64,000 nt of DNA from Pocillopora damicornis. Taxonomy: Eukaryota. The notes below the pieces were generated by a model. That model did no database searches and had not been told where the DNA came from. It saw only the letters and a list, made by a program, of their open reading frames with translations. A program made the position numbers and the translations under genes. Numbering within the stretch: the stretch's first letter is position 1; every line of letters begins with the position of its first letter. Of the stretch, positions 15,577 through 31,700 are shown one piece after another. The DNA lies in contig NW_020844672.1 of the NCBI RefSeq assembly GCF_003704095.1, positions 310,001 through 374,000 of the forward strand, read 5' to 3'.

Positions 15577-18005
15577 GATCAAACTATTGAAAGAAACAAG
15601 TGCCAGCCCGTGACACGTGACCGTCACGAGGTGAATTAAGCTGCCCACACGAGGAAATCAACAAAACAGATACAACTAGAGACAATTCCAGAGCTGGGCG
15701 CTGCCTTTGAATTCAATCATGAACTGAGTCGATTGTTTCAATGGCGACAGATCACATCAACGTTGGGAAAGTTACGAAATGTTGCGTTTGTTGTAACCTG
15801 TCTGGAAATTCAAATTTTACAAGAAGTTTCCGTTCGAATGGAACCACAATTCTATTCCCTTTTTGAATGGAATGTTGAAAATTGCAACAAATTGTCCTTC
15901 TTGTTCGATAGAAATTAAATAAATACAGATATTGCTAAAAGCTCCATTCATGTTTGAATTAGTGTATGGTTATTCTTCAGCCGGTTCTTTTAGTCTAGTT
16001 CAAAAAAAATGTGGCCAGCCTTGGCCAGTTTTACACTTTTGTCCCTGTCACGTGTCCTTCCCAATGGTATGGCAAATTACACGGTAATTAAGACAGGCTA
16101 AAAGGAAGATTGGCCGGAACCAGGTATGGGAAAATATCAAGAAACGTGACAGCCCATGTTGCATAATATTTCCTTAACAGGATTTTGCCATAACTGTAGT
16201 TTTCATTGGTTCCCCTCGCCATCAGCTGTACCTCTCACTTGTCAAAAAGATCATGTTTGCTAGGGCGGCAATATAAATTACGGCATTTGAAACAATTTCC
16301 ATAACTTCACTGTACCAAAGTGAAATAAGTATATTGTGCACGTCAAAGGTACGGCGTTCAACACGTGTCTTTAAGAAAGAAAATACGTTAAATAACACCA
16401 TGATTAAAAGCTTTAAATTCATCTCAGTTTTCAATACCTTTATTTTCGACAGATTAGAGTTAATTTAAAACTAGCGCTAGCCACCGCCTGTAAATATTCA
16501 ACTTTCTCTCGAAAAAAAAAGAAACCACTTGAGAAAAGTTAGTTAAAAACTCTGCCCAAGGTCAGCCAGGATTAGAAAATGAGTCATTTCCTTCGCGAGT
16601 TACTGTTATGAATGGAAGGTGTTCAAATTCAAATTGAAATCTTTCCGCGCTAAAACGCAAGCTTCACGCAAAACGTAAATCCATGTTGTAAGAATAAATG
16701 AACACATACGTCAGATGTATTTTTGAACCAAATAAACTAATTTACACACAAATTAAGAGGACATGACCTTCGCAGCCGTGAAATCACAATCGCTGAGATA
16801 CAGCACACTTGTGTTCAAAATTGCCTAAAAATGGATGAGGATCAAATTACTTTTACGATATTACAAAAGCAGCAATTTGTAAATGGCTGAAAAAGACAAT
16901 GACCAAAAACAAAAACAAAAAAACCAGAATAAAATTGCGCACTGTTGTGCAAAGAAATCAAGTAACAAGAAGCCTATGGCAGAATTATGACTTACGATGA
17001 AAACGAAACTTCCCAGGACAACCAATGAAAATGAAGAAAGAGCAACTGCAAGACGTTGCCGGTCTTGGTGTTACAAAACATTTTAAGACTTCACATAAAA
17101 GGGAATTTACGCGAGCCAGGAAATACAAGCTAAGTGTAAAGTCGATGCTAGTATTTCAACAAACGAAAAAAACACCCCCATTATAAACAACTCCTGAGAT
17201 GGAACGAAGAGAAGATGAATACCTCACGAAAACTTTTCATTTGACTTGACAGGAAACAAGCCCACAGCAGTATGAGATTCAGTCTCTTTCATAAAATACG
17301 CCAAATTAATTACTTTCAAAGTGAGGGAAGCCACAAAATATATAGTTTGGAGATGGAAAAACACCAAAACAAAAGTAGTTTTACTAAAAAGTAAAACCAG
17401 TGGTGAGAGATAGAGAAGATTGAATCTGATTGCAGCCTGACCGCCACCTTGGGAAAGTTTTTGAAGCTCCTTCAAATGAAACGCAAGTTAAGCGACCAGA
17501 AGGTGTAAAGTTAAAATTTTTTTTTACACCTTTATACTGCTCCGTCCACTCAAACGTACTCAGCGTTATGAAAAATTACAACAACTAACTTTAACCTACA
17601 AGGAAGCCACAAGAAAATCAAAGATTCTCGATACTTGAGTTCTACCTAATAATATTCCGCAAAAATTATTAAATTCACTTCCAAGAATGAGTCTCAAACT
17701 CACCCTTAGCATGATGGATTGATACTAAGTTAGTCCCTTTATAATACTAACAAGAAAGCAGTATCTGCATATCATTATAGGGGTAGCTACCTAATTATCA
17801 ACACTGGCTACAACTTTGAATTAAAGAATACAAGCTGAAGAACATTACACAAGTTCTGTCTTGACACTATTGGCACAAGCTCACCAGGGAGATTACCTGG
17901 ATAATTTTTTAAGTCACTTCTGTTTCCATACAGATTTATTCGCAGATAGAGTGAACCTTCATCACAGAAGTTAATTAAAGAATGAGAATGACAATATTTG
18001 AAGTT

Positions 18006-21000
18006 TTACTCTTCATCGTCTTCTTCCTCCTCGTCCTCCTCTTCTTCGTCTTCGTCTTCTTCCTCAATAGCATCATCTTCTTCTCCATTCACATCACCAT
18101 TCTCTACCCTGTCCAGTCGAACTAAAAACAGAAAACAAAGAATTCACTTCAGTAATTTAAACTAATGCCATTATGTGTAAGGTCATGTACAACAGAAACA
18201 TTACACTGAAACCTGTATCAAGGGGACCCTATATTAAGCGGACATGAAACCCTAATCCAAAACAATTCCTTCCACATTTACTGACACTAAAGTCAACCCC
18301 TTTATTCCCTGAAACCTGTATAAAGTGGTTCCTTAACTCTTAAACTCCCAGAAATTATTAACATGTAACTTCTCCCTAAAATATTCATACACTATCCTGC
18401 AAACAGGTAACAAGAATATTCAAACTAATCAGGAAGAAGTTGATATCTTGATCCAACACCAGATTTTTGTAACTAAGGGGAGAATTGAAAATCTTGGAAG
18501 TAAAGAGTTAATGAGAAATTTTAGCTTCATTTCTATCCCACTGCAGTTTTAACATTACAATTTTCACACAAGAAAAAGGTTTTTCCCTTGGTATTAATTA
18601 AGACTAATTCTATCTGGCCAAAAAGACCAGACTTAAATTGTCACTGATTGCAAACTATTTTCTGTTTGGGAGTTTCGGTAACTGCTTCCCAGGTGATTTA
18701 TCAAGCAAACACTAATGATACAACCTGGGTGCAAATCTAGGAGCCAACTGACTTTCTTCCCCCTGTTCACCCAATATATATTAATAACTTACTTGAATCA
18801 TTGTTTCGAACCATTAACTCTGCTGCTCTGATTCTTGGTCCTTGTGTGTCAAAACTCATACCAAAAACAAGCAGTGTTCTGTTCTTTTCCAAAGAGGTGA
18901 CAATTTTTTGTTCAACTTGACTACCAATAATGGCAGACTATAAGGAAAAGCATAAACAACTGGCTCAACAGTATGAAGCAGTAGAGTAACCAAACTTAAC
19001 ACAAGCTGTAGACATAAAAAGATTGCTCAGCATGCTTCACCACATTTTCAGTATCCCAGAACCAATAGAAAATATGTTAAATAGTACAGATTGAGGATGA
19101 AACTTAATCATTGTAAGACCACAGACTTATGTGATCATCAAGGAATGCATAGTTATCGTCATGATCATAATAAACTGCAACATTTATTTACTGAATGGGT
19201 GTAAACAAGCACCTTTGATAAAAAAATATATATTCACCTGATTGGATAGCCTCAGTGCTGTCAAGTTAGTATTAGTTTCTAGAACTTTCATGATTGCCTG
19301 AAAATAGAGAAATATTAATGCTATTTAGTACTTAGAGATCAGCATATTGCTTCTCATCACCAAAAATCATGTGTTACTTAAAGCTGACTGTCAACATAAA
19401 AGGAGAGAAGAAAATCAATTTATCACATGCCAGGCTTACATTGCCAGTTTCAAGAAAGATAAAATGAAATATTGGAAGTTGAAAAAAATTAGGTGTTTAT
19501 TTTTTGTTTATTAGATATTATATCCTTCACAATAACTTGTTTCCAAAAACATTTGGTCTACATTTATAACTTCTCAGATATAATTGTTGAGTACCATATT
19601 TGCATGCAAGTGATTAATATTTTAGTCAAATAGCTTCTGTGTGTTTTCCATCAACCTTTGTCATCTTGAACAAGGGCTTCTGAAAGATTTTAACAAAACA
19701 TTCCACAAGTTACTGCAAAAATGAACTGCAGAAATAATGTCTGCTACACACCATGATTCCATCTCCAGTCAGGAAGTTAGACTCCAGGTTGATGCTCTCT
19801 AAGGTCTTGTTTTTACTTAATGCCTCTGCAAACATCTGAGAGAATCAAACAGCAAATTTATTTTCAAACAAAATGTAGATGTCTGTCAAACAATGTTATC
19901 AACCAGGGGAGGGGAAGATGGTCCTGTCTTTCATGGTTACCGACTTTTGTTGCAACATGGTAAGTAGTGCTATCAAAATGATTTTCCCTGAAGATCATAA
20001 TTATTACTTGAATAACAAGCAAAATTGTCAAAAAATTGGAAACAAATGAGACAAAAACTGTTTTTTGAATGCGCTTCAATTCAGAGTTTATCCTAGACAA
20101 AGAATACCTTGGCAGTCTTGTCTGTCATCTGTGTGTTGGCTAACTGAAGATGTTTAAGATTGGTATTACTTTTCAGTGCCTTGGCAACATCTTCAAGAAT
20201 CTCTGTAGTGACATCTCTATGATTGTTCAAGTTTAGATTTGTCAATTTTGCATCATTTCTTTTGAATTGTTCCATTGCTTTCCCAAGGTCCAACTCATTT
20301 ACAGCTGTGAGGTCAGGCTTTTTTATCTTAGTTGCCTTTACAACACCTGGGATTAGAAAAGGAATACTGTTAATCTTTCATTGTACTTTAGCAGCTGAAA
20401 ACTAAAACTGAATTCACCAAAGGCAGTCCTCTGCTGGATTCAAATGAATGAGCTAGGCAATGTAAGTATAATACTGCTCTAACAACTACAGGCTGTAAGT
20501 CTACTGCCTGTGATCAAGACAGGTCTTAAAACCAAATCCACTAACAAATGTTTTATAGTTTTTGTCAGCAGTTTTGAAGAAGTTATAAATATGAAATCTG
20601 CCTTAGTTGCTCATGGAAGTTTAAGTGTTAAGCCCTCTCATAAAAACAAAGTTTTGTAAGTTTCCCAAAGACAAAAGCACAGGTTGTATATAGCACCCAT
20701 GCTTTTCAAGAGCACAACCCTGAGAACATATAGGAGTACAGTGGTGTTTAACTCACCAGGTTTGTATTTCTTTAAGCCACTGCCTCTTAAAGCTTTCCCA
20801 GCTTCCATCTTTTCTGCAAAGTGACTCTGAGTTTGGGTTAACATGCCATGCACACCAAGTATTGCTGGAAGAACAATATCAAAAACAATCAAGTTCAAGA
20901 GGGAAGGATTCCAACAAACAGCACTATTTCATTTCATTACACTCTGCCTTCAGGTAGCAGATCTTGGATATTTTTGGTCAACTTTTTTTTTTGATATAAG

Positions 21001-23513
21001 TATTAGCCCTAACTCCCAGATCAAATTTGTAATTCTCCTTTCTGTCAACCATACAATTCTTATCATGTTAGTTCAGAGAATTTAGTATTGAATCAACTAA
21101 TTATCCCCAAATTGATAGTTTCCTTAATTCTCATCACTTATCTGGTTGATAATGTATTGATATTATAAGGAGAAATTCTGTCTTGGTCACTCATGGGAGT
21201 TAAAGGGTTAAGTAAGCTTGATACAAGTTTCCTTTTAACAAAAACTAAAACACATAACTCCCATAAAAATGTCTGTATTGAATATGCAGCAGCCTATGTA
21301 TGCTATAGACTGTGTATAATGCAGATAGTCAACTATCCAAATATACAAATGATTTGTTACAATGGAGTCTTGATACTGTGATCACTAGAAATCTCAAACT
21401 TGAGACACCATTTCATCACCACAAGGAGAATGCAACTAGAGAGCACATTTTGGAACCTTCTGGTCAATCCCTTAGAATTTCACGATAACAATATTCCACT
21501 GATTATAGTACTAAAAAGTAACACTTGAACCTTTGCACAGAGATCAATGGTCGTTTCATTTACCTGCAAGTTCCATCATTTCCTCATCAGTTGCATTATC
21601 TAAAACCTCACTGAGATCATCAGGGAGCAGTGGAGTTGGATCTTTTTTCCCTGGCTGCTCCTTTGGCCGCCAAACTTTGCCACGCGTTTCTTTCTTGTAT
21701 GGAACATAATCTGAACGTTCCTTCAGATTCTTAGCCTGTTCTTCCAGGTGTTCCAACAGATGTTGTCGATCAAATGGTCCAGTGTTATCCTTTTCTGTCT
21801 GGTTTTCTTGCCGCTCATGAACTGGGAGAAGGGCATTCTTTTAAAGAGATAAAATGTGGAGGAAATATTAAAAATTTGTTGTTAAGAAAGGAAAAACAAA
21901 TGTCTGAGTTTCTAATGAGAATTGGAACCTTGGTCAATACCAGTTTACAGTCAGTTGCTTCACTTTCAGATTCCAAAAGAACTTGTGTGAAAGCTGGGGG
22001 ATACAATCACTTTATAAATTTCAAACAAGGATAAATCTTAAAAGGTCACTAGAATGAATAAAATAATAATCACAAATTTTAAAGATTATTAGATAACTGA
22101 TCATTTTCACAACTGCTTTAGCTGTGTACATAACTGCAAAGGTATTTCATATTTTTTAAGTAAATTTAGTTCTCAGGATGCAACATCAAGTTGATAAAAG
22201 CAGTCTTTCAGGAAGTGCAAGAATGCAGAGTGCATGGCAAGAGTGTTTAAATTACCAAAAAAGCAATTTTTTTTGACCAGTTAAATTGTAGCATCTGTTG
22301 AAGCCATTAAAAATAGGTCTGTATTTCTCCATAACACAAAACACAATTTCAAGTGGACCTACAAGGCACTTGAACAATCTATTAAATCTGTTCTACTATC
22401 AGTTTAGTGCACAATTAAATGCAACATCTTTGCAAAGTCTTTGCAATACTCACAGAGAGAAGATCTCCTCACCATAAGAATTAGCATGCATGCAAGCTGA
22501 CAGATAACAAAACCAGCTTTTCAAAGTTTCATGCTAAGCTCATGCTATAAAATACTTAGGACATATCATGTCAATGTAACCCCTTCCTGAGATAATAAAA
22601 AACTTGTTTAAACATTCGATGTATTAAAATCCGCGCGGAAAATCCCAGCATTTCCTCTCTAACTTTATCGAGACTAGTCTAAGGAAACCAGTATCCATGA
22701 AGAGATCTGGCTGCTATCAAACTGCATCGTTACTATATTTACTTTCTGACCAATCACACTCATTATATGAATAGCATCGACAAGTAATTGTCGAGGAATA
22801 TCAACCCAAAAACACTCACTTCAAGGGGAATTACATTTAGCTTTTTTCCATGAATGACGATGAAAAAAAAGCGACTTTTAAAAGTACCATAGTGGCCAAT
22901 ATCCGAATCAAAAGTTAACATAAACACACGCTCAAAGTCTAATTATAGGTACGTCTTCGTGAATGTGTAAAAGACTGGACTTCATAAAACTGATCATAAC
23001 ATTCACTTTGTAGGTTAAATAATACAAACGAAGGTTAACTTTCAGGTGATCCAAAATATAGCCCTTATAAATCAGTGCTGTGTTCGAGTATAGGGTGCGT
23101 GAATCTAGTCACCATGAATGCAAATTACTACAACATACACTCAGCATGAATGTATGTGAGATCAAAAAAGAATCATCCCTGTTTAGGACAAAAACATCCG
23201 TACGAACCTAGGTAAAACGCTAAAACAGCGATGTGTCGCTCGGTGAGTTGCAAAAGCAAACAAAGCATATCGAACACATAACATGCTTCGATGCTAGCAG
23301 GAGTGAGCGACTCACGACTTGGCATGATTGCATGATTACTTGGATCACTGGAGGGACATCATGTCTTTCTTTAATATAAATTCTTACCTCGGGATCAATA
23401 GCTGCATTGAGGTCTGCTAACTCCTCTGGAGACAGAGCTTCCACTAAAGAATCCTCATCGATGTTTTGGAACTGATCGAGATCCACAGACTCTTTTTGCT
23501 TCACCCAAGACAT
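18006..23513 (-). CDS. TMOD: Tropomodulin, 383 aa; exons 23388-23513, 21564-21837, 20757-20864, 20108-20346, 19752-19835, 19238-19297, 18793-18937, 18006-18121
   Basis: DEDSLVEALSPEEL, DPENALLPVHERQ, TGPFDRQHLLEHLE, ATDEEMMELAAILG, LRR domain (LNLNN, INLESNFLTGDG, LRLSNQ), RNND; all introns GT-AG with consistent phase. Confidence 0.96.
18333..18511. mobile_element. TTAA-type MITE, related family
   Basis: TTAACTCTT...AAGAGTTAA termini; similar size and subterminal sequence to families A and B. Confidence 0.6.
21003..21211 (+). mobile_element. TTAA-type MITE, family B
   Basis: AACTCCCAGATCAAATTTG...GTCACTCATGGGAGTTAAAGGGTTAA; inverted copy at 40215-40420. Confidence 0.8.
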
Positions 23514-24818
23514 GGCGTCCAACTTAGTGCCCAAGTTAGCAAGATTTCGTCAAAGTACTCGATGAATATGACTTTTTCTGCCAAGGATGTCCTTATTTTG
23601 GACAGATACAAACTAAAAGCGGGAAAATAACCGGTTATTTCCCTCCTTGGACGAGAAAATCGAGGAAAATTTCATTCACAACACTCCCTTATTCGTCTGA
23701 CAAAATACTCAAGCTCGACCCAGACCCTCCGCGCTCATAAATATTCCTTACAAAGTGTGATGGGCGGTGTTGAGTGAAATGATGAGTTTTGCTGGATTGT
23801 TCTGATAAACAGTCATCCAAGATTGGGCTCCGTTTCAAATTTATAACAAAGTTAAATTGGAACAGCATGGTTTCCATTGCATAATATATCGATTGATTAC
23901 GAAGTTTAGCGTTAACGAAACCGAGCTAATAAAGTTATTGAACTTTTACTGAGGTATTTTTTTTTGCCAAATATTGTTGTACCTGTTTAGCTGGAGTTAA
24001 ATAAAATCTTCTCATCATTTTCGAAGTTTATGGACATTTGTTGCACATCACTCTTCTCGAATCAATTATTTAGCGGATTTCGAATGTTATCTCCATCACC
24101 ATAGAGCTAATATGAAAAATAAACACTTCAGACTGGATGATTGCCTCTGTCACTACGATTTCTTTCACGTAACGGTCACAGATTGAAAGAATCGTCTGCG
24201 TCATTCAAACAACGACTCCAAGGAAACAGACCAATTCTGACGCCTATAGAACTGTGACGCTTAAATTTTACAGAAGAATGGATCAGGGATCATTCTCTGT
24301 CTCTAAGCAATCTTGTAAGAGCGAAACCCTCGTTGGCTGGAAGCTGAAAGTATCAGTTTCCATATCACAGACATCGCACCCACAAACTAGCATTCCCATC
24401 TTTGATGCTTTTAAGTTACATAAAAAAAGTCGCGTGTTCAATTCCCTCCGACCAGCACAAAAGGAAACTCGTGTCCAAAATGTTAGATATCATTACCAAC
24501 TCTCGGCGATGTTTTGCCGATGTACATCACTTAATATGCTTAAACTGAGAGTGAACGTTTTTGGCAGATAAAATTATTCACAGACGAAATATTTTTTCCC
24601 AAGAAATTTCCTTATGTTTCCCTGTCTCTTACTAGTGTCCTTGTTGAAAAACTACAAAGCTGGGCACTTCTGAATCAAAATCTATGGAATTTCTCAACAG
24701 AAAAGGTTAATTCATTCTTGAATAAACCACGAAACAGTTTTGTTTATAAATCGTAGGTTGTCTGAGGTCAAATCAATTAAAGTGATCAGTACTCGTGGAA
24801 AACACTTTGCATTCGCTG

Positions 24819-25030: not shown

Positions 25031-27147
25031 AGTACAGCTAGGAAAAAGGTGCTGTCATGATTCAAGGGAACACTACAGCCAACAGTTTAAACGCGCGACT
25101 TCTCTTAGTCCCAGCCCTCCCCTCCCTTCCACTCCTCTGGTGAAACTTGAGAAACCGATAGGTGGACAAAACAGGAGGGGTGTAACGACAGAGGACCAGG
25201 GAACAGTAGGACGGGTAAGGGCTGAGAGACAAGCTGCAGGGAAGAAACAACGCTCTCGGCCTTGTAAGAAATTTTGCGGAAGGATGTCAAGAATACCTAC
25301 CAAAACTCTTAACCTTGCACAAACAAGAGGGTCTCAATGGGGTCATAGCTTTAATGGCTAACACTTAAACTTTGGGCTACTTTGCGGTTACGGTTAACCC
25401 AAAATAACACATTGAAGAAAAGAAAAAATTTTACGGTTCATTTTTCTTTACGGCTAATGGTTAACACCACTGAGACACTCAAACAAACTTATATGTTTTA
25501 AGCGATTGTAGTGAGACGTAACAAACCAACGCAAATAATTAAACTCGGAACGTAAAAGTGTACGAAGTTTATTGATACAGCGTGGTGGTCTGATTAACAA
25601 CCGGACTTTTAGATTAAAAACTACCAGTGAAGTTTCCGTGATTGCCTTCATATAAATGTTTACGCATTAGTTCAAATTCTAACAAAACCTGGTTCATAAT
25701 ATAATCCCCGTCAAGAATAAAAATTGACATCACAGACTATAGGTCTGGTTGACAACCTGATAAGTTTCGTTGTTCTTAACTCTTAGTCTTTAAGACCTAA
25801 CTACGTGTTCTCGTGCAAGTTTCTGAGATTACATAGTAAGAAAGATACAATTGACCAATGCTGGAAATTCGGTACTGCGATAAAAACTAATTATTGTCCT
25901 AAAATTACACGATTTCGTTACACTACAACACAATCACTCTCTAATGTACGATTCCATTAAAATATTTCATTGTTCAATTAAAGTTATCCCGCGCGAGATC
26001 ATCTCACCAAGTTAAAACTTAAAAAAAAATCATTTCAAGCTACAATTCTATTTAATACATTTATTCCGACGATCGTATCACTGCATAGATTTGCAAATTC
26101 ACCTAAAAAATTTACTAGAAATTGTCGTCTTTGCACGATTGGCTCCTTCAAAAAGTTACCCTTTAAGGATGTTTTCTGTTAAAGAGGATAAGATCTAAAA
26201 GCAAAAGGTCTAAAAGCTAGGAAATCAGTGAAAAGCAGTTGACAGATAAATGATTGGCAGACAACCCCGATGCATTTGGTGGGTGTTGTGTAGTATCTCA
26301 CTAAGCGTGCTTAGCCAAAAATTGCTCATCTTTCTAGAAAAATATCTTATGCGCGACACTTGTACGGTGTCAGATTCGTCCAATTTGGCACAAGTAGATA
26401 GACTTTTTTGACTTTACATCGTCTTTAAATGAGATACTGAACTTTTTGTCCTCCAATCTGCGAGACAAAATAAAAGAAAACACATCATAAGTAGATTTTA
26501 AAATAAAATGCCGTACAAAAATGAATTATAAATAAACAAGGGATGAATAACCCTAACCCTCGCTGAAAATAAGCTTTAAATAAAAAAGAAACGATAATCA
26601 GCGATAATCAAAGAGGAGAGTAACATTTTTAACAAACAAGAGATTCTTCATGATGAATGCCACTTTCATCAACCGAACTTCTTCTGTTGAAGGAATCATT
26701 TGCGAGCATTTTACGCTTCACTTGGTTTTCCCGGCAACTTGAACCGCATTTAAAGGAAAAGATTATCTATTTTCCTCAATTTTAAGTCTTCGCCATAAAA
26801 TTTTCTCACAGAACTTATCAGGGGGAATCTCTTCGAAGAGGGTTTTCTTCGAATCCTGTAAATTCCCCTTACAGCATCCCTAACAACTCAACTTCAGTAA
26901 CATAATTTAACCCTTTCAAATGTTTTTTTCACGTTAAGTCCTCCTGTCTACAGGGTGCCATGTCGATTTTTGGACAGACAGACTTGTCTAAAGAAAATTC
27001 CCAGAGAACGGTAATATAAGACAACACTAGTGTCGATGAACACAAAACAGTAGCGTTGAGTTGAGGTGGCGCTCCACGACACTCGTTAAACCCTCGAGAT
27101 GTGTATCTGACTAAAAGAAATTTGAGGAGAGATCACTAACTTTTTTT

Positions 27148-28745
27148 CTAACGGAGTACCTTGCGAGGCCTGGTAGAGACACTGACAGCGGCAGTTTCGC
27201 CTTCGTGACCCTCTTGGAACACATCCACCACACACACATTGCTACTTGGGCTGAAGTTTCGGTCACGGATCAAGAACTCTACACACGGAGCATGACGATA
27301 AGCCTCCCAGGAATCATGGAATTCTATGTACTGTTGCACAAAACAAATTCAACTGTTAACCCTTTAACCCCTAAGAGTGACTTGCATCTAATTTCTCCCT
27401 ACAATATCAACTCAGAATGATACCTTAAGGTCATGAGAATATAGCAAATGATCACCAACTAAATAAAGTTCTTGATTGTAAAACAAATTCTCCCTGCCAG
27501 CACATCAGGAAATGTATAGAGAACAGTATGGAGAATATGCATACTGATGTTAGGATGTAAAGGGTTAAAGGAGAAAACATATGGACTTGAATCCAATTTG
27601 GAGTGGCTGAGATCCACGCCAGGTGTAGATCGAACACGATAATTTAATTTAATCTTATCAACTGAGTTTGAGCCTGATCTTTCGAGCGTTAGCCCTTCGC
27701 CAATCACTCTGATGACGGGCTTACGTTCGAAACGTCAGCCTTTAAACTCTCTACGGTAGCCAATTTACGTGAACAACTCAGTTGATAACACGAAATTACC
27801 CTGTTATACTCTCCCAACGACGCAGCACCACAGTTTTTTTTTAAAGAAACTTACCCCTTTATTCATAGGGCAGATCTATCCACTTGTGATGCGCTAGCAA
27901 CCTGCCTGTGGCCTTAACACAGGTGTAATTTTACTCCTGGCGTAAATGCAATTCTCTACAAGCTTTTTTCAAATTTGTTCAAACTTGTTGACTTCAAAGA
28001 ACGACGAAAGAATGAGCAACTGCAAGAGCCTAAAACGTGAAACCACTTATCTTCTCAGGATAGCTGATCTAAAATGTTCCCGATTGTCCAATATATATCT
28101 AAGTTCTTACCTTCTTGCAGCTTGATCGAGCCACCCAGTTGTTGTTGAGGTCTCTCAGCTGTACTCTGACATCACTAGCGTCTCCGTGCACTAGAACAGG
28201 TTTGAACGGAGAAAATGGAAATCGGCCAAGCTCTGCCTCAGAGTTGCATACATCCTAAAAAAATCAATATAACAATTTACTTGACTACTTTGTATCTTAC
28301 CCCATTGAAGAAAAATCAGGTTTCGCATTGCAAATGTGGCTACTACTAAGAAGAAAATGAGGCTCAACTTGAGTATTATTGTTTGTCTCTCGATATGGTC
28401 ACTTCTGTGGAGGAGGCGTAATCTCTACTACCAAGAACCCGTCTTTACGCAACCTGCTCTCGCGACTGATTGAGCATTTTCCTCATTTCAAAATTTCTCT
28501 CCCAATTGCAATTTTAGATAGCCTCATTTTCTGAACCACAAATTACAGTGCCTCCCTTTAAAAACGGGAAAAAAAACTTCTCAAACCTTAAACGCTGCTT
28601 CCGTGTCATCTAGCAATACCACATTCAAAGCCCAGTCATCATTCACCCTTGGGGGAGGGGCGAACACTGCCGCCAACATGCGCTTGGTAGCCTTGCCTCG
28701 CGTGTGAGGGCGAGATCTGCCCACCAGGCTAAATGCTGAGAAATG
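27148..28745 (-). CDS. UPA domain of ZO-1 following ZU5 (last three exons)
   Basis: HFSAFSLVG...[10 protein letters not shown]...[24 protein letters not shown]...VRVQLRD...YIEFHDSW...CVEFLI...CVVDVFQ aligns by eye with the UNC5-type UPA domain. Confidence 0.8.
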
Positions 28746-31700
28746 ATCCACAAGGACTGAAACCGAGTTGGAATCTACTTGGCACTGGTCTCCTCGGGAA
28801 TCCCGACCTTGAAGAGAAACGTTCTTCCATTCAGATGGCTGACCTGCGGGACAGCGGTAACAAAACACTATATGAATTTTCATCCAATGAACTCTACGGA
28901 TCACTAGTGTCCTCCTACAGAAAATGTCTCTTTTTTGATGTCTTACAAAGGCCACAAAAGGCACTGTGAGTCAAATTCCAACAACGCGTAGCCACAAGGA
29001 GTATTGATCGATTCTCTCGGTTGAACTGGATACTACACTTTTGTAAACTATTGCAAACAATCAAGCCCTAATTAGGTAACTTTAACAGCCTCAAATCAAC
29101 AGCGAAACGCGCTCTAGGACGATTACCTTCACATCCACACACTCACACAAATACACGTACCTGTGGGCGTGTCACTGGACTTGAGGGCAAATGACCATCC
29201 ATCAGGGGTCATGGAGGCACAGTGCGGCAGACGGAGCTCCACAGGTTTGAGGAACTGAGTGCCATGAGGGCCACACATCACTAATGGACTCAGAAGAGTT
29301 TCTCCTAACACCATACAAACACAACACGTCACATATTCACCTACCATGTGTCGTTACACAATAATACAGCCAACCACCAGACAAAAACTACTTAAGATAG
29401 TTACGATTGTCGTGTGTGCAATAAACGCTGAATTTCAGTAGGTCAGTAGCGATGTTGAGGTTTTTCTAACCGGAAAAATGCTGTCATTTTCTGGTCAAGT
29501 ATTTCAGGTTGTAAGTAATTCTGTACGGAGCAAAAGAATCACTATGAAACGTAGCCTTTAAAAACTTTGATGTCCTTACCTCGATCAGAATCTAATGGAG
29601 GCATAAAGTTGTTGTCTTTACAGACTTTGAAGTAGATTTCCTGTTCCACACCCGGTGGGATAGCACCTTCAGGTATGACAATGCTAACCCCGGACTCCGG
29701 GGAAGATAGGACACCCCCCTGAGAAGTGAACTTGCCCCTAGCAGTAGCAACGACTTGTGTGTCTTCATCCAGGGATTCAAAATCACTGAAAGAAACAATA
29801 CGAAGAAAAAATTTCTTTTGATGGATTAATTGGACTGATTTCAATTTCTTCTGAGCATCTCTCAGTAAGGTCGCGACCACGACATTCAGGATCCTCGGGA
29901 CAAAACGAATAGACTTTGCTCCAGCAACAAAGCTAAACGAGTCCGTGCGCCAAATTGGCCGCCAAGCGACAAAAACGTCCCTTTGAAGATCGAGTGACTG
30001 GATGAAAGTAATCTTTAGTTTTCCCATTACGCGAAAGTCACACGCGAAAAAATAATTTAAGAAAAGCTTGTTCAACATATGTACTAAAAGACCAAATATA
30101 TCTTCACTTTTATAGAAAACCGTGTCTTGTTTGTTGTAAGAATAACGGCCAGGCTACCACTAAGATGACGCATGGATAAATCAAAGCTCTGAACGAAAAT
30201 AAAGAAAAACTATTTGTAAATCTGATACATAAAGCTACTTATAGATGCGACCGATGCAAGGAGTTATATTAACACAAAGTTAATATTTTTTGACAGTCTG
30301 ATAAGCAACAAACGTGACAATTGACGTAACATGAGGGAAACTTTATTAAAATTTGCGTTGCCTTGATCTAACTCTACGCTCTACGAAGCGACTTGATTTT
30401 TCACGACTCATCTCCAAATCAACACTTTGTTGAAGCTTGGAAAGTGGCCTTGTCAAAGGCGCAATCGTGAACCTATTTTCCCTAATTCTGTTCTCGAAAA
30501 ACACTTCCCTTAGCTTAAGATTTCTAGCCTCGGACATTTACTCCTCACCTTGTCACAACGTTCTGTCCTTCGTGATCCATGTTGTCAAGGTCTGACGTGA
30601 CCTTGTGCCTGTACTCTGTTCTGTACGTCGTCGGTCTCGGGTCTGGCTCGCGCTCTGGTCGGGAAAAACGAGGAGATCCCGAGAGGCGAAAATTGTACGT
30701 CACAGGGTCTCCTATGCGAGGCCCATCCGAGGGTCTGCTTGTGGGTGGGTCACGAGAAAAAGGCCGATCACCCGAAGAAGGCCTGTCATTGTTCCCGGCA
30801 TTGAAAGGTTTAGGAGCGTAAGCTGAATACGCCGATCGGGGGCGTTCGGGTCTCCCCGCGTCAAACTTGGGCGCCGTTCGGGTCGGAATCGTCACTTCGG
30901 CTCTGTAACGAGGTTCTCGAGATAGACTTCCCGTTCTGTTCTCAGAATTCATAGGGAACTCAGTCTGCGGTGCACTTTCCACTCGATAATTCGAGACGTT
31001 CGCGCGGATTTCAGACTCCGCAGGTTTATCGCGATCAAAACGCGTAACGGTGGGGTAAGAACGCGTTGGATAATAGCTAGAATGTGCTGTCTCCTTCTTA
31101 TCTGGATTTGAATAATCCACCACAAGGTTACGAGGTTTTCTGTCGTACGACTCCGAGAATGGACGAGGTTTGCGTTCCTCGACAGAGCGCCGTCGCTGAG
31201 GTATTAAGGCTGACTCTAAATCTTCCAAACGCTTTTCAAGATCTGCCTCCACTTCTTTCTTTTTCTCCTGTACTTCGATCGGTGGTTCTCGGATGCGATC
31301 GATTTGCTCTCGACGCTGACTCGACTCGTTATCAATTGCCCAGAGCTTAGACACCGGGACTCCTACGCGTGCGTCGTACTCTTTGAGAAGGTCGGAATCA
31401 CCTTCGACTTTACGAAGACTTTCACGCTTCATTCGCAATTCTTCGGCGTCCGCTTCGGACCGATCGAAGCCATCGGGCATTCGGGTCTTCTTGAGTGACT
31501 GTCTTAGCTCAACTGGGTTCTCACGAGAAGGAAGTAACCTTGAAAGAATAATAACACAACAGTTACTCATTTTTACTTGTCACTGTTCAACATTGTGCGA
31601 CAAACAGACAAGTCAGTTCAATCAGTGAAGCAACGTGAAAATTTTGATGACCGTTTAAAAATTATTTCAGAGCTCTTCGAGCTCAGGAATGTGAAGAGCC

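What the first reader, a model, noticed from the sequence alone, without database searches (positions are those of the whole stretch)
28720..28780. ZO-1 keeps an HFS self-cleavage motif exactly where vertebrate ZO-1 stops
Seen: the ZU5 domain ends SVSVLVDHF and continues S-AFSLVG (HFS codons 28745-28737). Established: vertebrate ZO-1 terminates at ...VSVLIDHF, and the ZU5 proteins PIDD1 and UNC5CL autoproteolyse between F and S of an HFS motif at this position, by the same chemistry as Nup98. Inference: this ZO-1 may cut itself to give an N-terminal product ending in DHF, identical to the vertebrate C-terminus, plus a UPA fragment. Vertebrate ZO-1 would then be a genetically fixed cleavage product, with a stop replacing the nucleophilic Ser.
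Basis: partly seen in the sequence, partly recalled or inferred. Interest (0 to 1): 0.92.

Follow-up and report, generated by a model that had tools for sequence, protein, structure and literature searches.

The report
Coral ZO-1 keeps a self-cleavage motif
The coral version of the tight-junction scaffold ZO-1 continues past the point where ZO-1 of most other animals stops. At that exact point it carries the His-Phe-Ser motif with which related proteins cut themselves, so the familiar ZO-1 end may be a fossil self-cleavage site; no cleavage has been tested.

Summary
A minus-strand exon (28843-28587) of the Pocillopora ZO-1 gene encodes ...SVSVLVDHF|SAFSLVG..., with the HFS codons at 28745-28737. 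RNA contigs and a cDNA contig show one uninterrupted reading frame from ZU5 into a real UPA domain (Pfam UPA 30.5 bits; UNC5B 3g5b E 3e-36; Foldseek also finds the NLRP1 and CARD8 FIIND).

The Phe aligns with UNC5B L677. A published model equates that residue with CARD8 F296, the residue just before the FIIND scissile bond.

All ZO-1 sequences found that keep sequence after this point have Ser there, encoded by TCA, TCT or TCG. These are six scleractinian genera, four coral metagenome contigs, Nematostella and three Branchiostoma species. All 187 other ZO-1 sequences found end exactly at DHF: vertebrates, hemichordates, molluscs, a centipede and the sea anemone Actinia. TAA or TAG sits in the Ser codon's place wherever I could read the DNA.

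Amphioxus still has HFS plus the next strand, so HF-stop arose at least four times.

Self-cleavage itself remains an inference (about 0.55). The scan noted HFS motifs at ZU5/UPA boundaries in other genes of this genome, but not in ZO-1. I found no paper on this. Verdict: new member of a known kind.

The parts
29580..29785 (-). Exon A: start of the ZU5 domain (...[14 protein letters not shown]...LDSDR)
   Evidence: Pfam ZU5 hit. Splice joint 29303|29579 seen in RNA contigs. Matches cDNA L001.
29161..29304 (-). Exon B: central ZU5 ([14 protein letters not shown]...SSDTPT)
   Evidence: Pfam ZU5 E 1.9e-16. Joints 29303|29579 and 28841|29159.
28587..28843 (-). Exon C: last ZU5 strands, the HFS tripeptide, and the first beta-hairpin of UPA
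   Evidence: Aligns to UNC5B 3g5b across the ZU5/UPA junction and to the ZO-1 ZU5 structures 2kxs and 2kxr. A single RNA contig spans exons C, D and E (X1 record 2).
28737..28745 (-). His-Phe-Ser codons (cat ttc tca); the proposed scissile bond lies between 28740 and 28739
   Evidence: No variant at these bases in four RNA runs. F aligns with UNC5B chain residue L137, which is L677 if the 405-residue chain starts at residue 541. PMC3210808 equates L677 with CARD8 F296.
28111..28254 (-). Exon D: UPA, middle part
   Evidence: Joints 28253|28586 and 27330|28111. UNC5B alignment. Pfam UPA on the joined cDNA.
27160..27330 (-). Exon E: UPA, last part (ends ...STRPRK)
   Evidence: Joints 27330|28111 and 26457|27160..
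27148..27159 (-). Alternative read-through end, ...K-VLR-stop (the 1710-aa isoform)
   Evidence: cDNA L001 and P0020 end in KVLR. An alternative joint 26457|27141 is seen in three runs. RefSeq isoform X2 has 159 residues after F.
26425..26457 (-). Exon F: 10-residue tail IGGQKVQYLI plus stop (the 1717-aa isoform)
   Evidence: Joint 26457|27160 in all four runs. The same tail is present in Porites, Montipora, Oculina and Acropora; Nematostella ends ...EYVI.
46618..46953 (-). Context: N-terminal CARD exon of the same gene
   Evidence: Pfam CARD E 4.4e-13. CARD is also found in the full-length P0227 and in the amphioxus protein.

Best explanation
The locus is the Pocillopora orthologue of ZO-1, with the architecture CARD, three PDZ, SH3, GUK, ZU5, UPA. 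This much is shown. Its ZU5 is joined to a complete UPA domain by a PIDD1/UNC5CL-type His-Phe-Ser tripeptide. The tripeptide sits in a tight turn between two strands, at the position homologous to the scissile bond of the autoproteolytic ZU5-UPA (FIIND-type) modules.

The mechanism is inferred. After folding, the hydroxyl of Ser1552 attacks the Phe1551 carbonyl (an N-to-O acyl shift followed by hydrolysis). This would give a 176-kDa scaffold fragment ending ...VLVDHF-COOH and an 18-kDa UPA fragment starting SAFSLVG. By analogy with NLRP1, the UPA fragment would at first stay docked through its first beta-hairpin.

The evolutionary reading is supported by comparison. The ancestral ZO-1 had ZU5-HFS-UPA. 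In Actinia, protostomes, hemichordates and vertebrates the Ser codon became a stop, which encodes the N-terminal product directly. That leaves the 'incomplete' ZU5 known from mammals, whose two missing strands are supplied in trans by partner hairpins.
For: - **Gene model and expression.** All splice joints appear in 3-4 RNA runs, and one contig bridges the HFS exon to the UPA exons. The cDNA L001 carries the whole ORF.
- **Domains.** Pfam ZU5 scores 119 bits and UPA 30.5 bits against a cutoff of 27. UNC5B ZU5-UPA matches at E 3e-36 over residues 17-297.
- **Structure.** In the AF2 model, strands 146-152 and 155-162 flank F153-S154, with local pLDDT 79-84. Foldseek finds 3g5b at E 2.5e-17, rNLRP1 FIIND 7crw_A at E 1e-6 and CARD8 7jn7_B at E 2.4e-4.
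- **Positional homology.** The coral F aligns with UNC5B L137 of the chain, that is L677. L677 corresponds to CARD8 F296 (PMC3210808).
- **Established chemistry.** HFS-dependent autoprocessing is established for PIDD1, Nup98 and UNC5CL (PMC9162469; PMC7883297).
- **Ser conservation.** Ser is kept in every orthologue found that has downstream sequence, with synonymous codons TCA, TCT and TCG.
- **Truncated orthologues.** 187 ZO-1 proteins end exactly at DHF. TAA or TAG occupies the Ser codon's place in Actinia, Saccoglossus and Tegillarca. Amphioxus keeps HFS plus WFALIG.
- **Mammalian ZU5.** It lacks two strands, which are completed in trans by a GRINL1A hairpin (PMC6928914).
- **Paralogues.** Paralogous ZU5/UPA junctions in this genome read DHFT. 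One recent duplicate has lost both H and T.
Against: - There is no biochemical or proteomic evidence of cleavage for any ZO-1.
- His and Phe are invariant in all 187 truncated orthologues as well, so they have a structural or binding role that does not depend on catalysis.
- Lineages that retain Ser are few: Hexacorallia and amphioxus. At the UPA's 51% identity between Pocillopora and Nematostella, conservation of a single Ser is weak evidence.
- The second catalytic His of NLRP1 and CARD8, 27 residues upstream of the Ser, has no counterpart 27 residues upstream in the coral sequence by direct count. No alignment to the FIIND was possible.
- The UPA part of the model has low confidence (pLDDT 50-65).
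- TCA and TCG are one step from a stop codon, so recurrent HF-stop could reflect mutational accessibility plus selection for an open ZU5 groove.
Confidence: 0.55

Rival explanations
1. The ZU5-UPA of cnidarian ZO-1 is an uncleaved structural supramodule, as in UNC5B and the ankyrins. In this reading Phe is the buried anchor of the last ZU5 strand, His is structural, and the Ser is incidental.
For: The closest sequence and structure match is the non-cleaving UNC5B. DHF is invariant in orthologues that have nothing to cleave. No counterpart of the NLRP1 H1186 / CARD8 H270 histidine was seen. Some FIIND alleles that carry the motif cleave poorly (my own knowledge, not checked here).
Against: UNC5B and the UNC5-like hits have Q-L-G or P-G at these three positions, not H-F-S. 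To my knowledge every ZU5/UPA junction with HFS that has been tested (two in PIDD1, one in UNC5CL) self-cleaves. Ser is kept with synonymous codon changes. This reading does not explain why four lineages truncated at exactly this bond.
Confidence: 0.33
2. Whether or not the protein cleaves, the recurrent HF-stop is not a fossil of cleavage. In this reading it reflects selection to remove the cis hairpin so that the ZU5 groove can bind partners in trans. The Ser codon was simply the only codon near the boundary that is one mutation from a stop.
For: In Pocillopora the seven codons from the Ser onward are TCA GCA TTT AGC CTG GTG GGC, and only TCA is one step from a stop. Mammalian ZU5 binds the GRINL1A and MRCK-beta hairpins in the vacated site.
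Against: A truncation one to a few residues later would open the groove equally well, yet all 187 truncated sequences end at +0. If cleavage exists, HF-stop is the one nonsense change that leaves the N-terminal product unchanged, which explains the exactness better. The two readings are not mutually exclusive.
Confidence: 0.3
3. Annotation artefact: the UPA exons belong to another gene, or the HFS exon is not joined to them in mRNA.
For: None beyond the initial absence of a Pfam hit on single exons.
Against: One RNA contig spans exons C, D and E, and all joints are seen in 3-4 independent runs. The cDNA L001 encodes PDZ through UPA in one ORF. The RefSeq models of six coral genera and of Nematostella agree.
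Confidence: 0.02

Closest known systems
PIDD1 (autoproteolysis at HF|S446 and HF|S588) and UNC5CL
   Same: They have a His-Phe-Ser tripeptide at the C-terminal end of a ZU5 domain, followed by a further ZU5 or a UPA. The proposed chemistry is the same N-to-O acyl shift (PMC9162469, PMC7883297).
   Different: Those proteins carry a death domain after the UPA and act in caspase-2, NF-kB or IRAK signalling. Here the module ends a junctional MAGUK, nothing follows the UPA except a 10-residue tail, and the only death-fold domain (CARD) is at the far N-terminus. Cleavage is untested.
FIIND of NLRP1 and CARD8
   Same: A ZU5-UPA fold is cut between Phe and Ser. The first UPA strand stays inserted in ZU5 and holds the fragments together (bioRxiv 2020.08.13.250241). 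The model matches 7crw_A and 7jn7_B by Foldseek.
   Different: The FIIND uses S-F-S plus a distant catalytic His. The ZO-1 motif is H-F-S, as in PIDD1. In the FIIND proteins the released fragment is UPA-CARD; here it would be UPA alone.
UNC5B ZU5-UPA-DD (PDB 3g5b)
   Same: It is the best sequence match (E 3e-36) and the best fold match (E 2.5e-17, TM 0.64), colinear across the whole ZU5-UPA.
   Different: UNC5B has D-Q-L-G where coral ZO-1 has D-H-F-S, and it is not known to self-cleave. It also carries a death domain, which is absent here.
Vertebrate ZO-1 ZU5 (PDB 2kxr, 2kxs)
   Same: It is orthologous, with 73-82% identity in the ZU5. The last strand...SVLxDHF, is identical.
   Different: It stops at the F and lacks the next two strands, which are supplied in trans by a GRINL1A hairpin, and by MRCK-beta in a similar way (PMC6928914). 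The coral protein supplies them in cis from its own UPA.

Membership tests
ZO (TJP) subfamily of MAGUKs, ZO-1 orthologue | Three PDZ domains, SH3 and GUK in that order | tested here: met
   Pfam on P0227, which is in the same 90% cluster as the window's protein: PDZ three times, SH3_2 (weak), Guanylate_kin. The corresponding exons are visible in the window.
ZO (TJP) subfamily of MAGUKs, ZO-1 orthologue | C-terminal ZU5 domain closest to ZO-1 ZU5 | tested here: met
   2kxs E 3.7e-46 and 2kxr E 4.7e-43. The top database hits are all named ZO-1/TJP1.
ZU5-UPA supramodule (UNC5, PIDD, ankyrin, FIIND) | ZU5 followed directly by a UPA domain | tested here: met
   Pfam ZU5 119 bits and UPA 30.5 bits (cutoff 27) on L001:3235-4170. 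UNC5B alignment over residues 17-297. Foldseek 3g5b TM 0.64.
ZU5-UPA supramodule (UNC5, PIDD, ankyrin, FIIND) | Death-fold domain (DD or CARD) after the UPA | tested here: not met
   The ORF ends 10 residues (QYLI isoform) or 3 residues (KVLR isoform) after the UPA. The only death-fold domain is the N-terminal CARD.
Autoproteolytic ZU5-UPA modules (PIDD1, UNC5CL, NLRP1, CARD8) | [H/S]-F-S tripeptide at the ZU5/UPA boundary, with Phe at the position of CARD8 F296 | tested here: met
   H152-F153-S154 of the cDNA segment. F aligns with UNC5B L137 of the chain, that is L677, which PMC3210808 equates with CARD8 F296. The 541 numbering offset is inferred from the 405-residue chain length.
Autoproteolytic ZU5-UPA modules (PIDD1, UNC5CL, NLRP1, CARD8) | Nucleophile (Ser, Thr or Cys) conserved at +1 in orthologues that retain downstream sequence | tested here: met
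   Ser is present in Pocillopora, Acropora, Montipora, Porites, Oculina, four coral metagenome contigs, Nematostella and three Branchiostoma species, with codons TCA, TCT and TCG. The sample covers only three deep lineages.
Autoproteolytic ZU5-UPA modules (PIDD1, UNC5CL, NLRP1, CARD8) | Accessory catalytic residues (NLRP1 H1186 / CARD8 H270, CARD8 E279) | tested here: inconclusive
   FIIND sequences could not be aligned by phmmer, and Foldseek gives no per-residue map. No His lies 27 residues upstream of S154. PIDD-type sites use the -2 His instead.
Autoproteolytic ZU5-UPA modules (PIDD1, UNC5CL, NLRP1, CARD8) | Actual cleavage of the Phe-Ser bond | not testable with these tools
   This needs protein expression or proteomics.

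The most novel reading that the evidence does not exclude
Ancestral ZO-1 was a self-cleaving, FIIND-like junction protein. Its UPA fragment ends in a conserved Y-[LV]-I tail that could bind a PDZ domain. The fragment is held by ZU5 and released when the scaffold is degraded or mechanically unfolded, which would signal loss of junction integrity, possibly through the N-terminal CARD. Bilaterians and Actinia later hard-wired the cleaved state and replaced the cis hairpin with trans ligands such as MRCK-beta and GRINL1A.
Probability: 0.12. Interest if true: 0.9.

Novelty: new member of a known kind. Interest (0 to 1): 0.68.

Why it matters
ZO-1 is one of the most studied junction scaffolds, and its ZU5 domain is known to be structurally incomplete without an explanation.

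If this reading holds, the incomplete domain and the exact C-terminus ...DHF are the remains of an autoproteolytic ZU5-UPA module that cnidarians still carry whole. That would add a cell-junction protein to a self-cleaving family so far tied to cell death and innate immunity (PIDD1, UNC5CL, NLRP1, CARD8).

It would also give an evolutionary rationale for the trans-binding hairpins of ZO-1 partners. And it would be an unusually clean case of a post-translational cut being replaced, several times independently, by a stop codon.

All of this can be tested with one expression construct and two point mutants.

Tried and rejected
- **Representative-library search with the 88-aa exon.** It gave only 11 hits, mostly genomic ORF fragments. 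Its value was to lead to the amphioxus protein P0010.
- **The search for homologous proteins with the Nematostella UPA alone.** It returned 2 hits because of the word index, which wasted one of three searches. As a result I could not sample Hydrozoa, Scyphozoa, Octocorallia, sponges, placozoans, ctenophores, echinoderms, annelids, tunicates, insects or nematodes.
- **Search for a UPA relic downstream of the Actinia stop.** The best local score was 39, against up to 38 in 30 shuffles, so this is not significant.
- **3' UTRs of Saccoglossus and Tegillarca.** No recognisable x-F-x-L-x-G relic was seen after the stop.
- **Stop codon identity.** TAA and TAG are compatible with TCA>TAA and TCG>TAG, but every stop codon is one step from some TCR codon, so this has no discriminating power.
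- **phmmer of the junction plus UPA against PDB.** It did not reach any FIIND chain, so the accessory catalytic residues could not be mapped.
- **Metagenome pattern scan.** It found only scleractinian host contigs.
- **DNA that could not be obtained.** Several isoforms were not on record.
- **Papers not held.** Tinel 2007, Heinz 2012 and Huo 2011 are not in the library, so I cannot exclude that one of them remarks on the ZO-1 HF end.
- **Spliced model.** Exons were searched by reference, and the natural cDNA contig L001 and database proteins served as the contiguous sequence. The only joining was an in-script translation for comparison with P0020.
Full report
**What is in the window**

On the minus strand, bases 28760-28716 read [15 protein letters not shown].

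The stretch lies in an exon at 28843-28587 with a canonical acceptor and donor. I modelled the 3' part of the gene as follows:

| Exon | Coordinates (minus strand) | Content |
|---|---|---|
| A | 29785-29580 | start of ZU5 |
| B | 29304-29161 | central ZU5 |
| C | 28843-28587 | last ZU5 strands, HFS, first UPA hairpin |
| D | 28254-28111 | UPA, middle |
| E | 27330-27160 | UPA, end |
| F | 26457-26425 | 10-residue tail and stop |

An alternative read-through end lies just after exon E and stops at 27148. Upstream exons encode three PDZ domains, SH3 and GUK, and a CARD exon lies at 46953-46618.

**Expression and gene model**

Contigs from four RNA-seq runs of four studies show every junction of this model. 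One 575-nt contig runs from the HFS exon through exons D and E. No variant touches the HFS codons.

A 4461-nt transcript contig from another run (L001) carries the ORF from the PDZ domains through the UPA in one frame. It differs from my exon model at one residue in 310.

Both 3' ends are transcribed. One is ...RPRK-IGGQKVQYLI and the other is ...RPRK-VLR.

The 90% cluster of this protein contains the RefSeq entries 'tight junction protein ZO-1' of Pocillopora verrucosa and P. damicornis. The window is therefore from a Pocillopora genome and the gene is already annotated automatically.

I sent no joined exon model to any search tool. L001 and database proteins were used by reference instead.

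**The domain after HFS is a real UPA**

- On the contiguous cDNA segment (312 aa; H152, F153, S154), Pfam gives ZU5 at 119 bits and UPA at 30.5 bits, against a cutoff of 27.
- phmmer against PDB aligns residues 17-297 colinearly with the ZU5-UPA of UNC5B (3g5b, E 3e-36).
- An AlphaFold2 model has mean pLDDT 65: ZU5 80-95, the junction 79-84, UPA 50-65. It places F153-S154 in a two-residue turn between strands 146-152 and 155-162.
- Foldseek's best hit is 3g5b (E 2.5e-17, TM 0.64). It also recovers the self-cleaving FIIND of rat NLRP1 (7crw_A, E 1e-6, TM 0.51) and of CARD8 (7jn7_B, E 2.4e-4).

**The tripeptide is at the scissile position**

In the UNC5B alignment, D-H-F-S pairs with D-Q-L-G, so the coral Phe falls on chain residue 137. 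With a 405-residue chain covering residues 541-945, that residue is L677.

D'Osualdo et al. state that CARD8 F296, the residue before the SF|S cut, corresponds to UNC5b L677 (PMC3210808).

HFS-dependent N-to-O acyl-shift autoprocessing is established for PIDD1 (F445|S446 and S588), Nup98 and UNC5CL (PMC9162469; PMC7883297).

In rat NLRP1, the first UPA strand after the cut forms sheets with ZU5 and holds the two fragments together (bioRxiv 2020.08.13.250241).

**Comparative evidence**

Two searches with ZO-1 C-terminal regions returned about 200 ZO-1 proteins.

Six clusters keep ZU5 plus UPA: Pocillopora, Acropora, Montipora, Porites, Oculina and Nematostella. All read DHF-S-x-F-S-L-x-G, with 159 or 166 residues after the Phe. 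An unbiased DNA pattern that left the +1 codon free found four more coral contigs in metagenomes, all with Ser.

Three Branchiostoma species read DHF-S-W-F-A-L-I-G followed by 22 more residues and a stop, with no UPA. The stop abuts a 51-bp tandem array.

Every other sequence, 187 in all, ends exactly at DHF. These are:
- vertebrates;
- three hemichordates;
- many bivalves and gastropods;
- the centipede Strigamia;
- all six isoforms of the sea anemone Actinia tenebrosa.

At the DNA level, the codon after TTC is as follows:

| Lineage | Codon after TTC |
|---|---|
| Pocillopora | TCA |
| Other corals | TCT |
| Nematostella | TCG |
| Branchiostoma | TCA |
| Actinia | TAA |
| Saccoglossus | TAG |
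| Tegillarca | TAG |

**Reading of the distribution**

Amphioxus retains Ser and the following strand. The S-x-F-x-L-x-G match to cnidarians has a chance expectation of about 2e-5 by my estimate. It follows that the bilaterian, deuterostome and chordate ancestors cannot have had HF-stop.

On the accepted animal phylogeny, HF-stop must then have arisen separately at least four times: in protostomes, in ambulacrarians, on the vertebrate stem, and in Actinia. The Actinia event is independent because its fellow actiniarian Nematostella and the corals keep the UPA.

Four truncations on the same codon call for an explanation.

- **Fossil cleavage site.** This is the simplest account. If the protein already cuts itself at F|S, a nonsense change at Ser is the only truncation that leaves the large fragment chemically unchanged. 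HF-stop then becomes an absorbing state once the UPA fragment is dispensable.
- **Open groove.** The alternative is selection for an open ZU5 groove combined with the fact that TCR is the only near-boundary codon one step from a stop. This is plausible and not exclusive. It explains the exactness less well, because ending one to a few residues later should open the groove just as well.

Either way, the 'incomplete' mammalian ZU5 lacks two strands that a GRINL1A hairpin completes (PMC6928914). Those strands are exactly what remains when the cnidarian protein's own hairpin after HFS is removed.

**Cautions**

- Cleavage has not been observed.
- His and Phe are as invariant in the truncated proteins as in the full ones, so their conservation does not speak for catalysis.
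- The Ser is conserved in only three deep lineages. The UPA is 51% identical between Pocillopora and Nematostella, against 82% for ZU5, so a single conserved Ser is modest evidence.
- I could not map the accessory His and Glu of the FIIND.
- Key older papers were not held. Seven of the eight full-text searches used bore on this idea and found no statement of it, but absence from this library is not proof of novelty.

**Side evidence from paralogues**

The HFS exon finds other ZU5/UPA junction exons in the same genome. Two read D-H-F-T, which keeps a possible Thr nucleophile. One near-identical tandem duplicate reads H-Y-F-A, having lost both His and the nucleophile together. One reads D-N-L-T. 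Earlier notes of this scan also report HFS motifs in NLR-like genes of this genome. The motif is thus a recurring and apparently coupled feature of cnidarian ZU5-UPA modules.

**Verdict**

I put self-cleavage of cnidarian ZO-1 at about 0.55. I put the statement that the bilaterian C-terminus derives from a stop at the Ser codon of an ancestral ZU5-HFS-UPA at about 0.85.

This is a new member of a known kind of module, sitting in an unexpected and heavily studied protein.

Noticed in passing
window 26425-26457 (-) and 27141-27160 (-): The gene has two alternative 3' ends. One is a spliced micro-exon giving the tail IGGQKVQYLI. The other is a read-through or alternative-donor form ending KVLR. 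The Y-[LV]-I end is conserved from corals (QYLI, HYLI) to Nematostella (EYVI) and looks like a hydrophobic C-terminal PDZ ligand on the putative released UPA fragment.
   Followed up: partly
window 46618-46953 (-): An N-terminal CARD exon belongs to the same ZO-1 gene. CARD-bearing ZO-1 forms also occur in amphioxus, oysters, scallops, hemichordates, a shark and a frog. A CARD isoform is published for zebrafish ZO1b (PMC10703405), so this feature is ancient and not new.
   Followed up: partly
L007 and L009 (G000:C521:37090-37284 and 17395-17637, minus strand): Two near-identical tandem paralogues of a ZU5-UPA gene differ at the junction motif. One reads T-D-H-F-T and the other T-H-Y-F-A, so His and the nucleophile were lost together in one copy.
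   Followed up: no
L005 (G000:C1098:19823-20065, plus strand): Another ZU5/UPA junction exon in this genome reads M-V-D-H-F-T-L-F-A-V-I-G. It is an HFT variant of the self-cleavage motif in an unidentified gene.
   Followed up: no
L003 41927-42119 (Branchiostoma floridae): A 51-bp tandem array of 3.9 copies starts three bases after the amphioxus ZO-1 stop. The last dozen or so codons of the ORF resemble the repeat unit. This suggests the UPA was displaced by a minisatellite.
   Followed up: partly
window 27312-27881: The intron between the UPA exons holds sequence with very high summed contig depth in all four RNA runs (up to about 100,000) and many loose ends. It is probably a dispersed repeat transcribed elsewhere in the genome.
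   Followed up: no
window 18000-23549 (-): The downstream neighbour is a tropomodulin/leiomodin-like gene. Pfam Tropomodulin scores 110 bits at 21559-21840, followed by LRR-like exons and an acidic tail.
   Followed up: partly
window 51700-63806 (-): The upstream neighbour is a large Ig plus fibronectin-III receptor-like gene, with I-set and fn3 hits, a likely transmembrane exon near 54400-54550 and a proline-rich cytoplasmic tail.
   Followed up: partly
PDB chains 2kxr and 2kxs compared with database ZO-1 proteins: The mammalian ZU5 used for the NMR structures lacks a roughly 20-residue segment ([16 protein letters not shown]...) that is present in the coral protein and in most database ZO-1 sequences. 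This is presumably an alternatively spliced insert inside ZU5.
   Followed up: no
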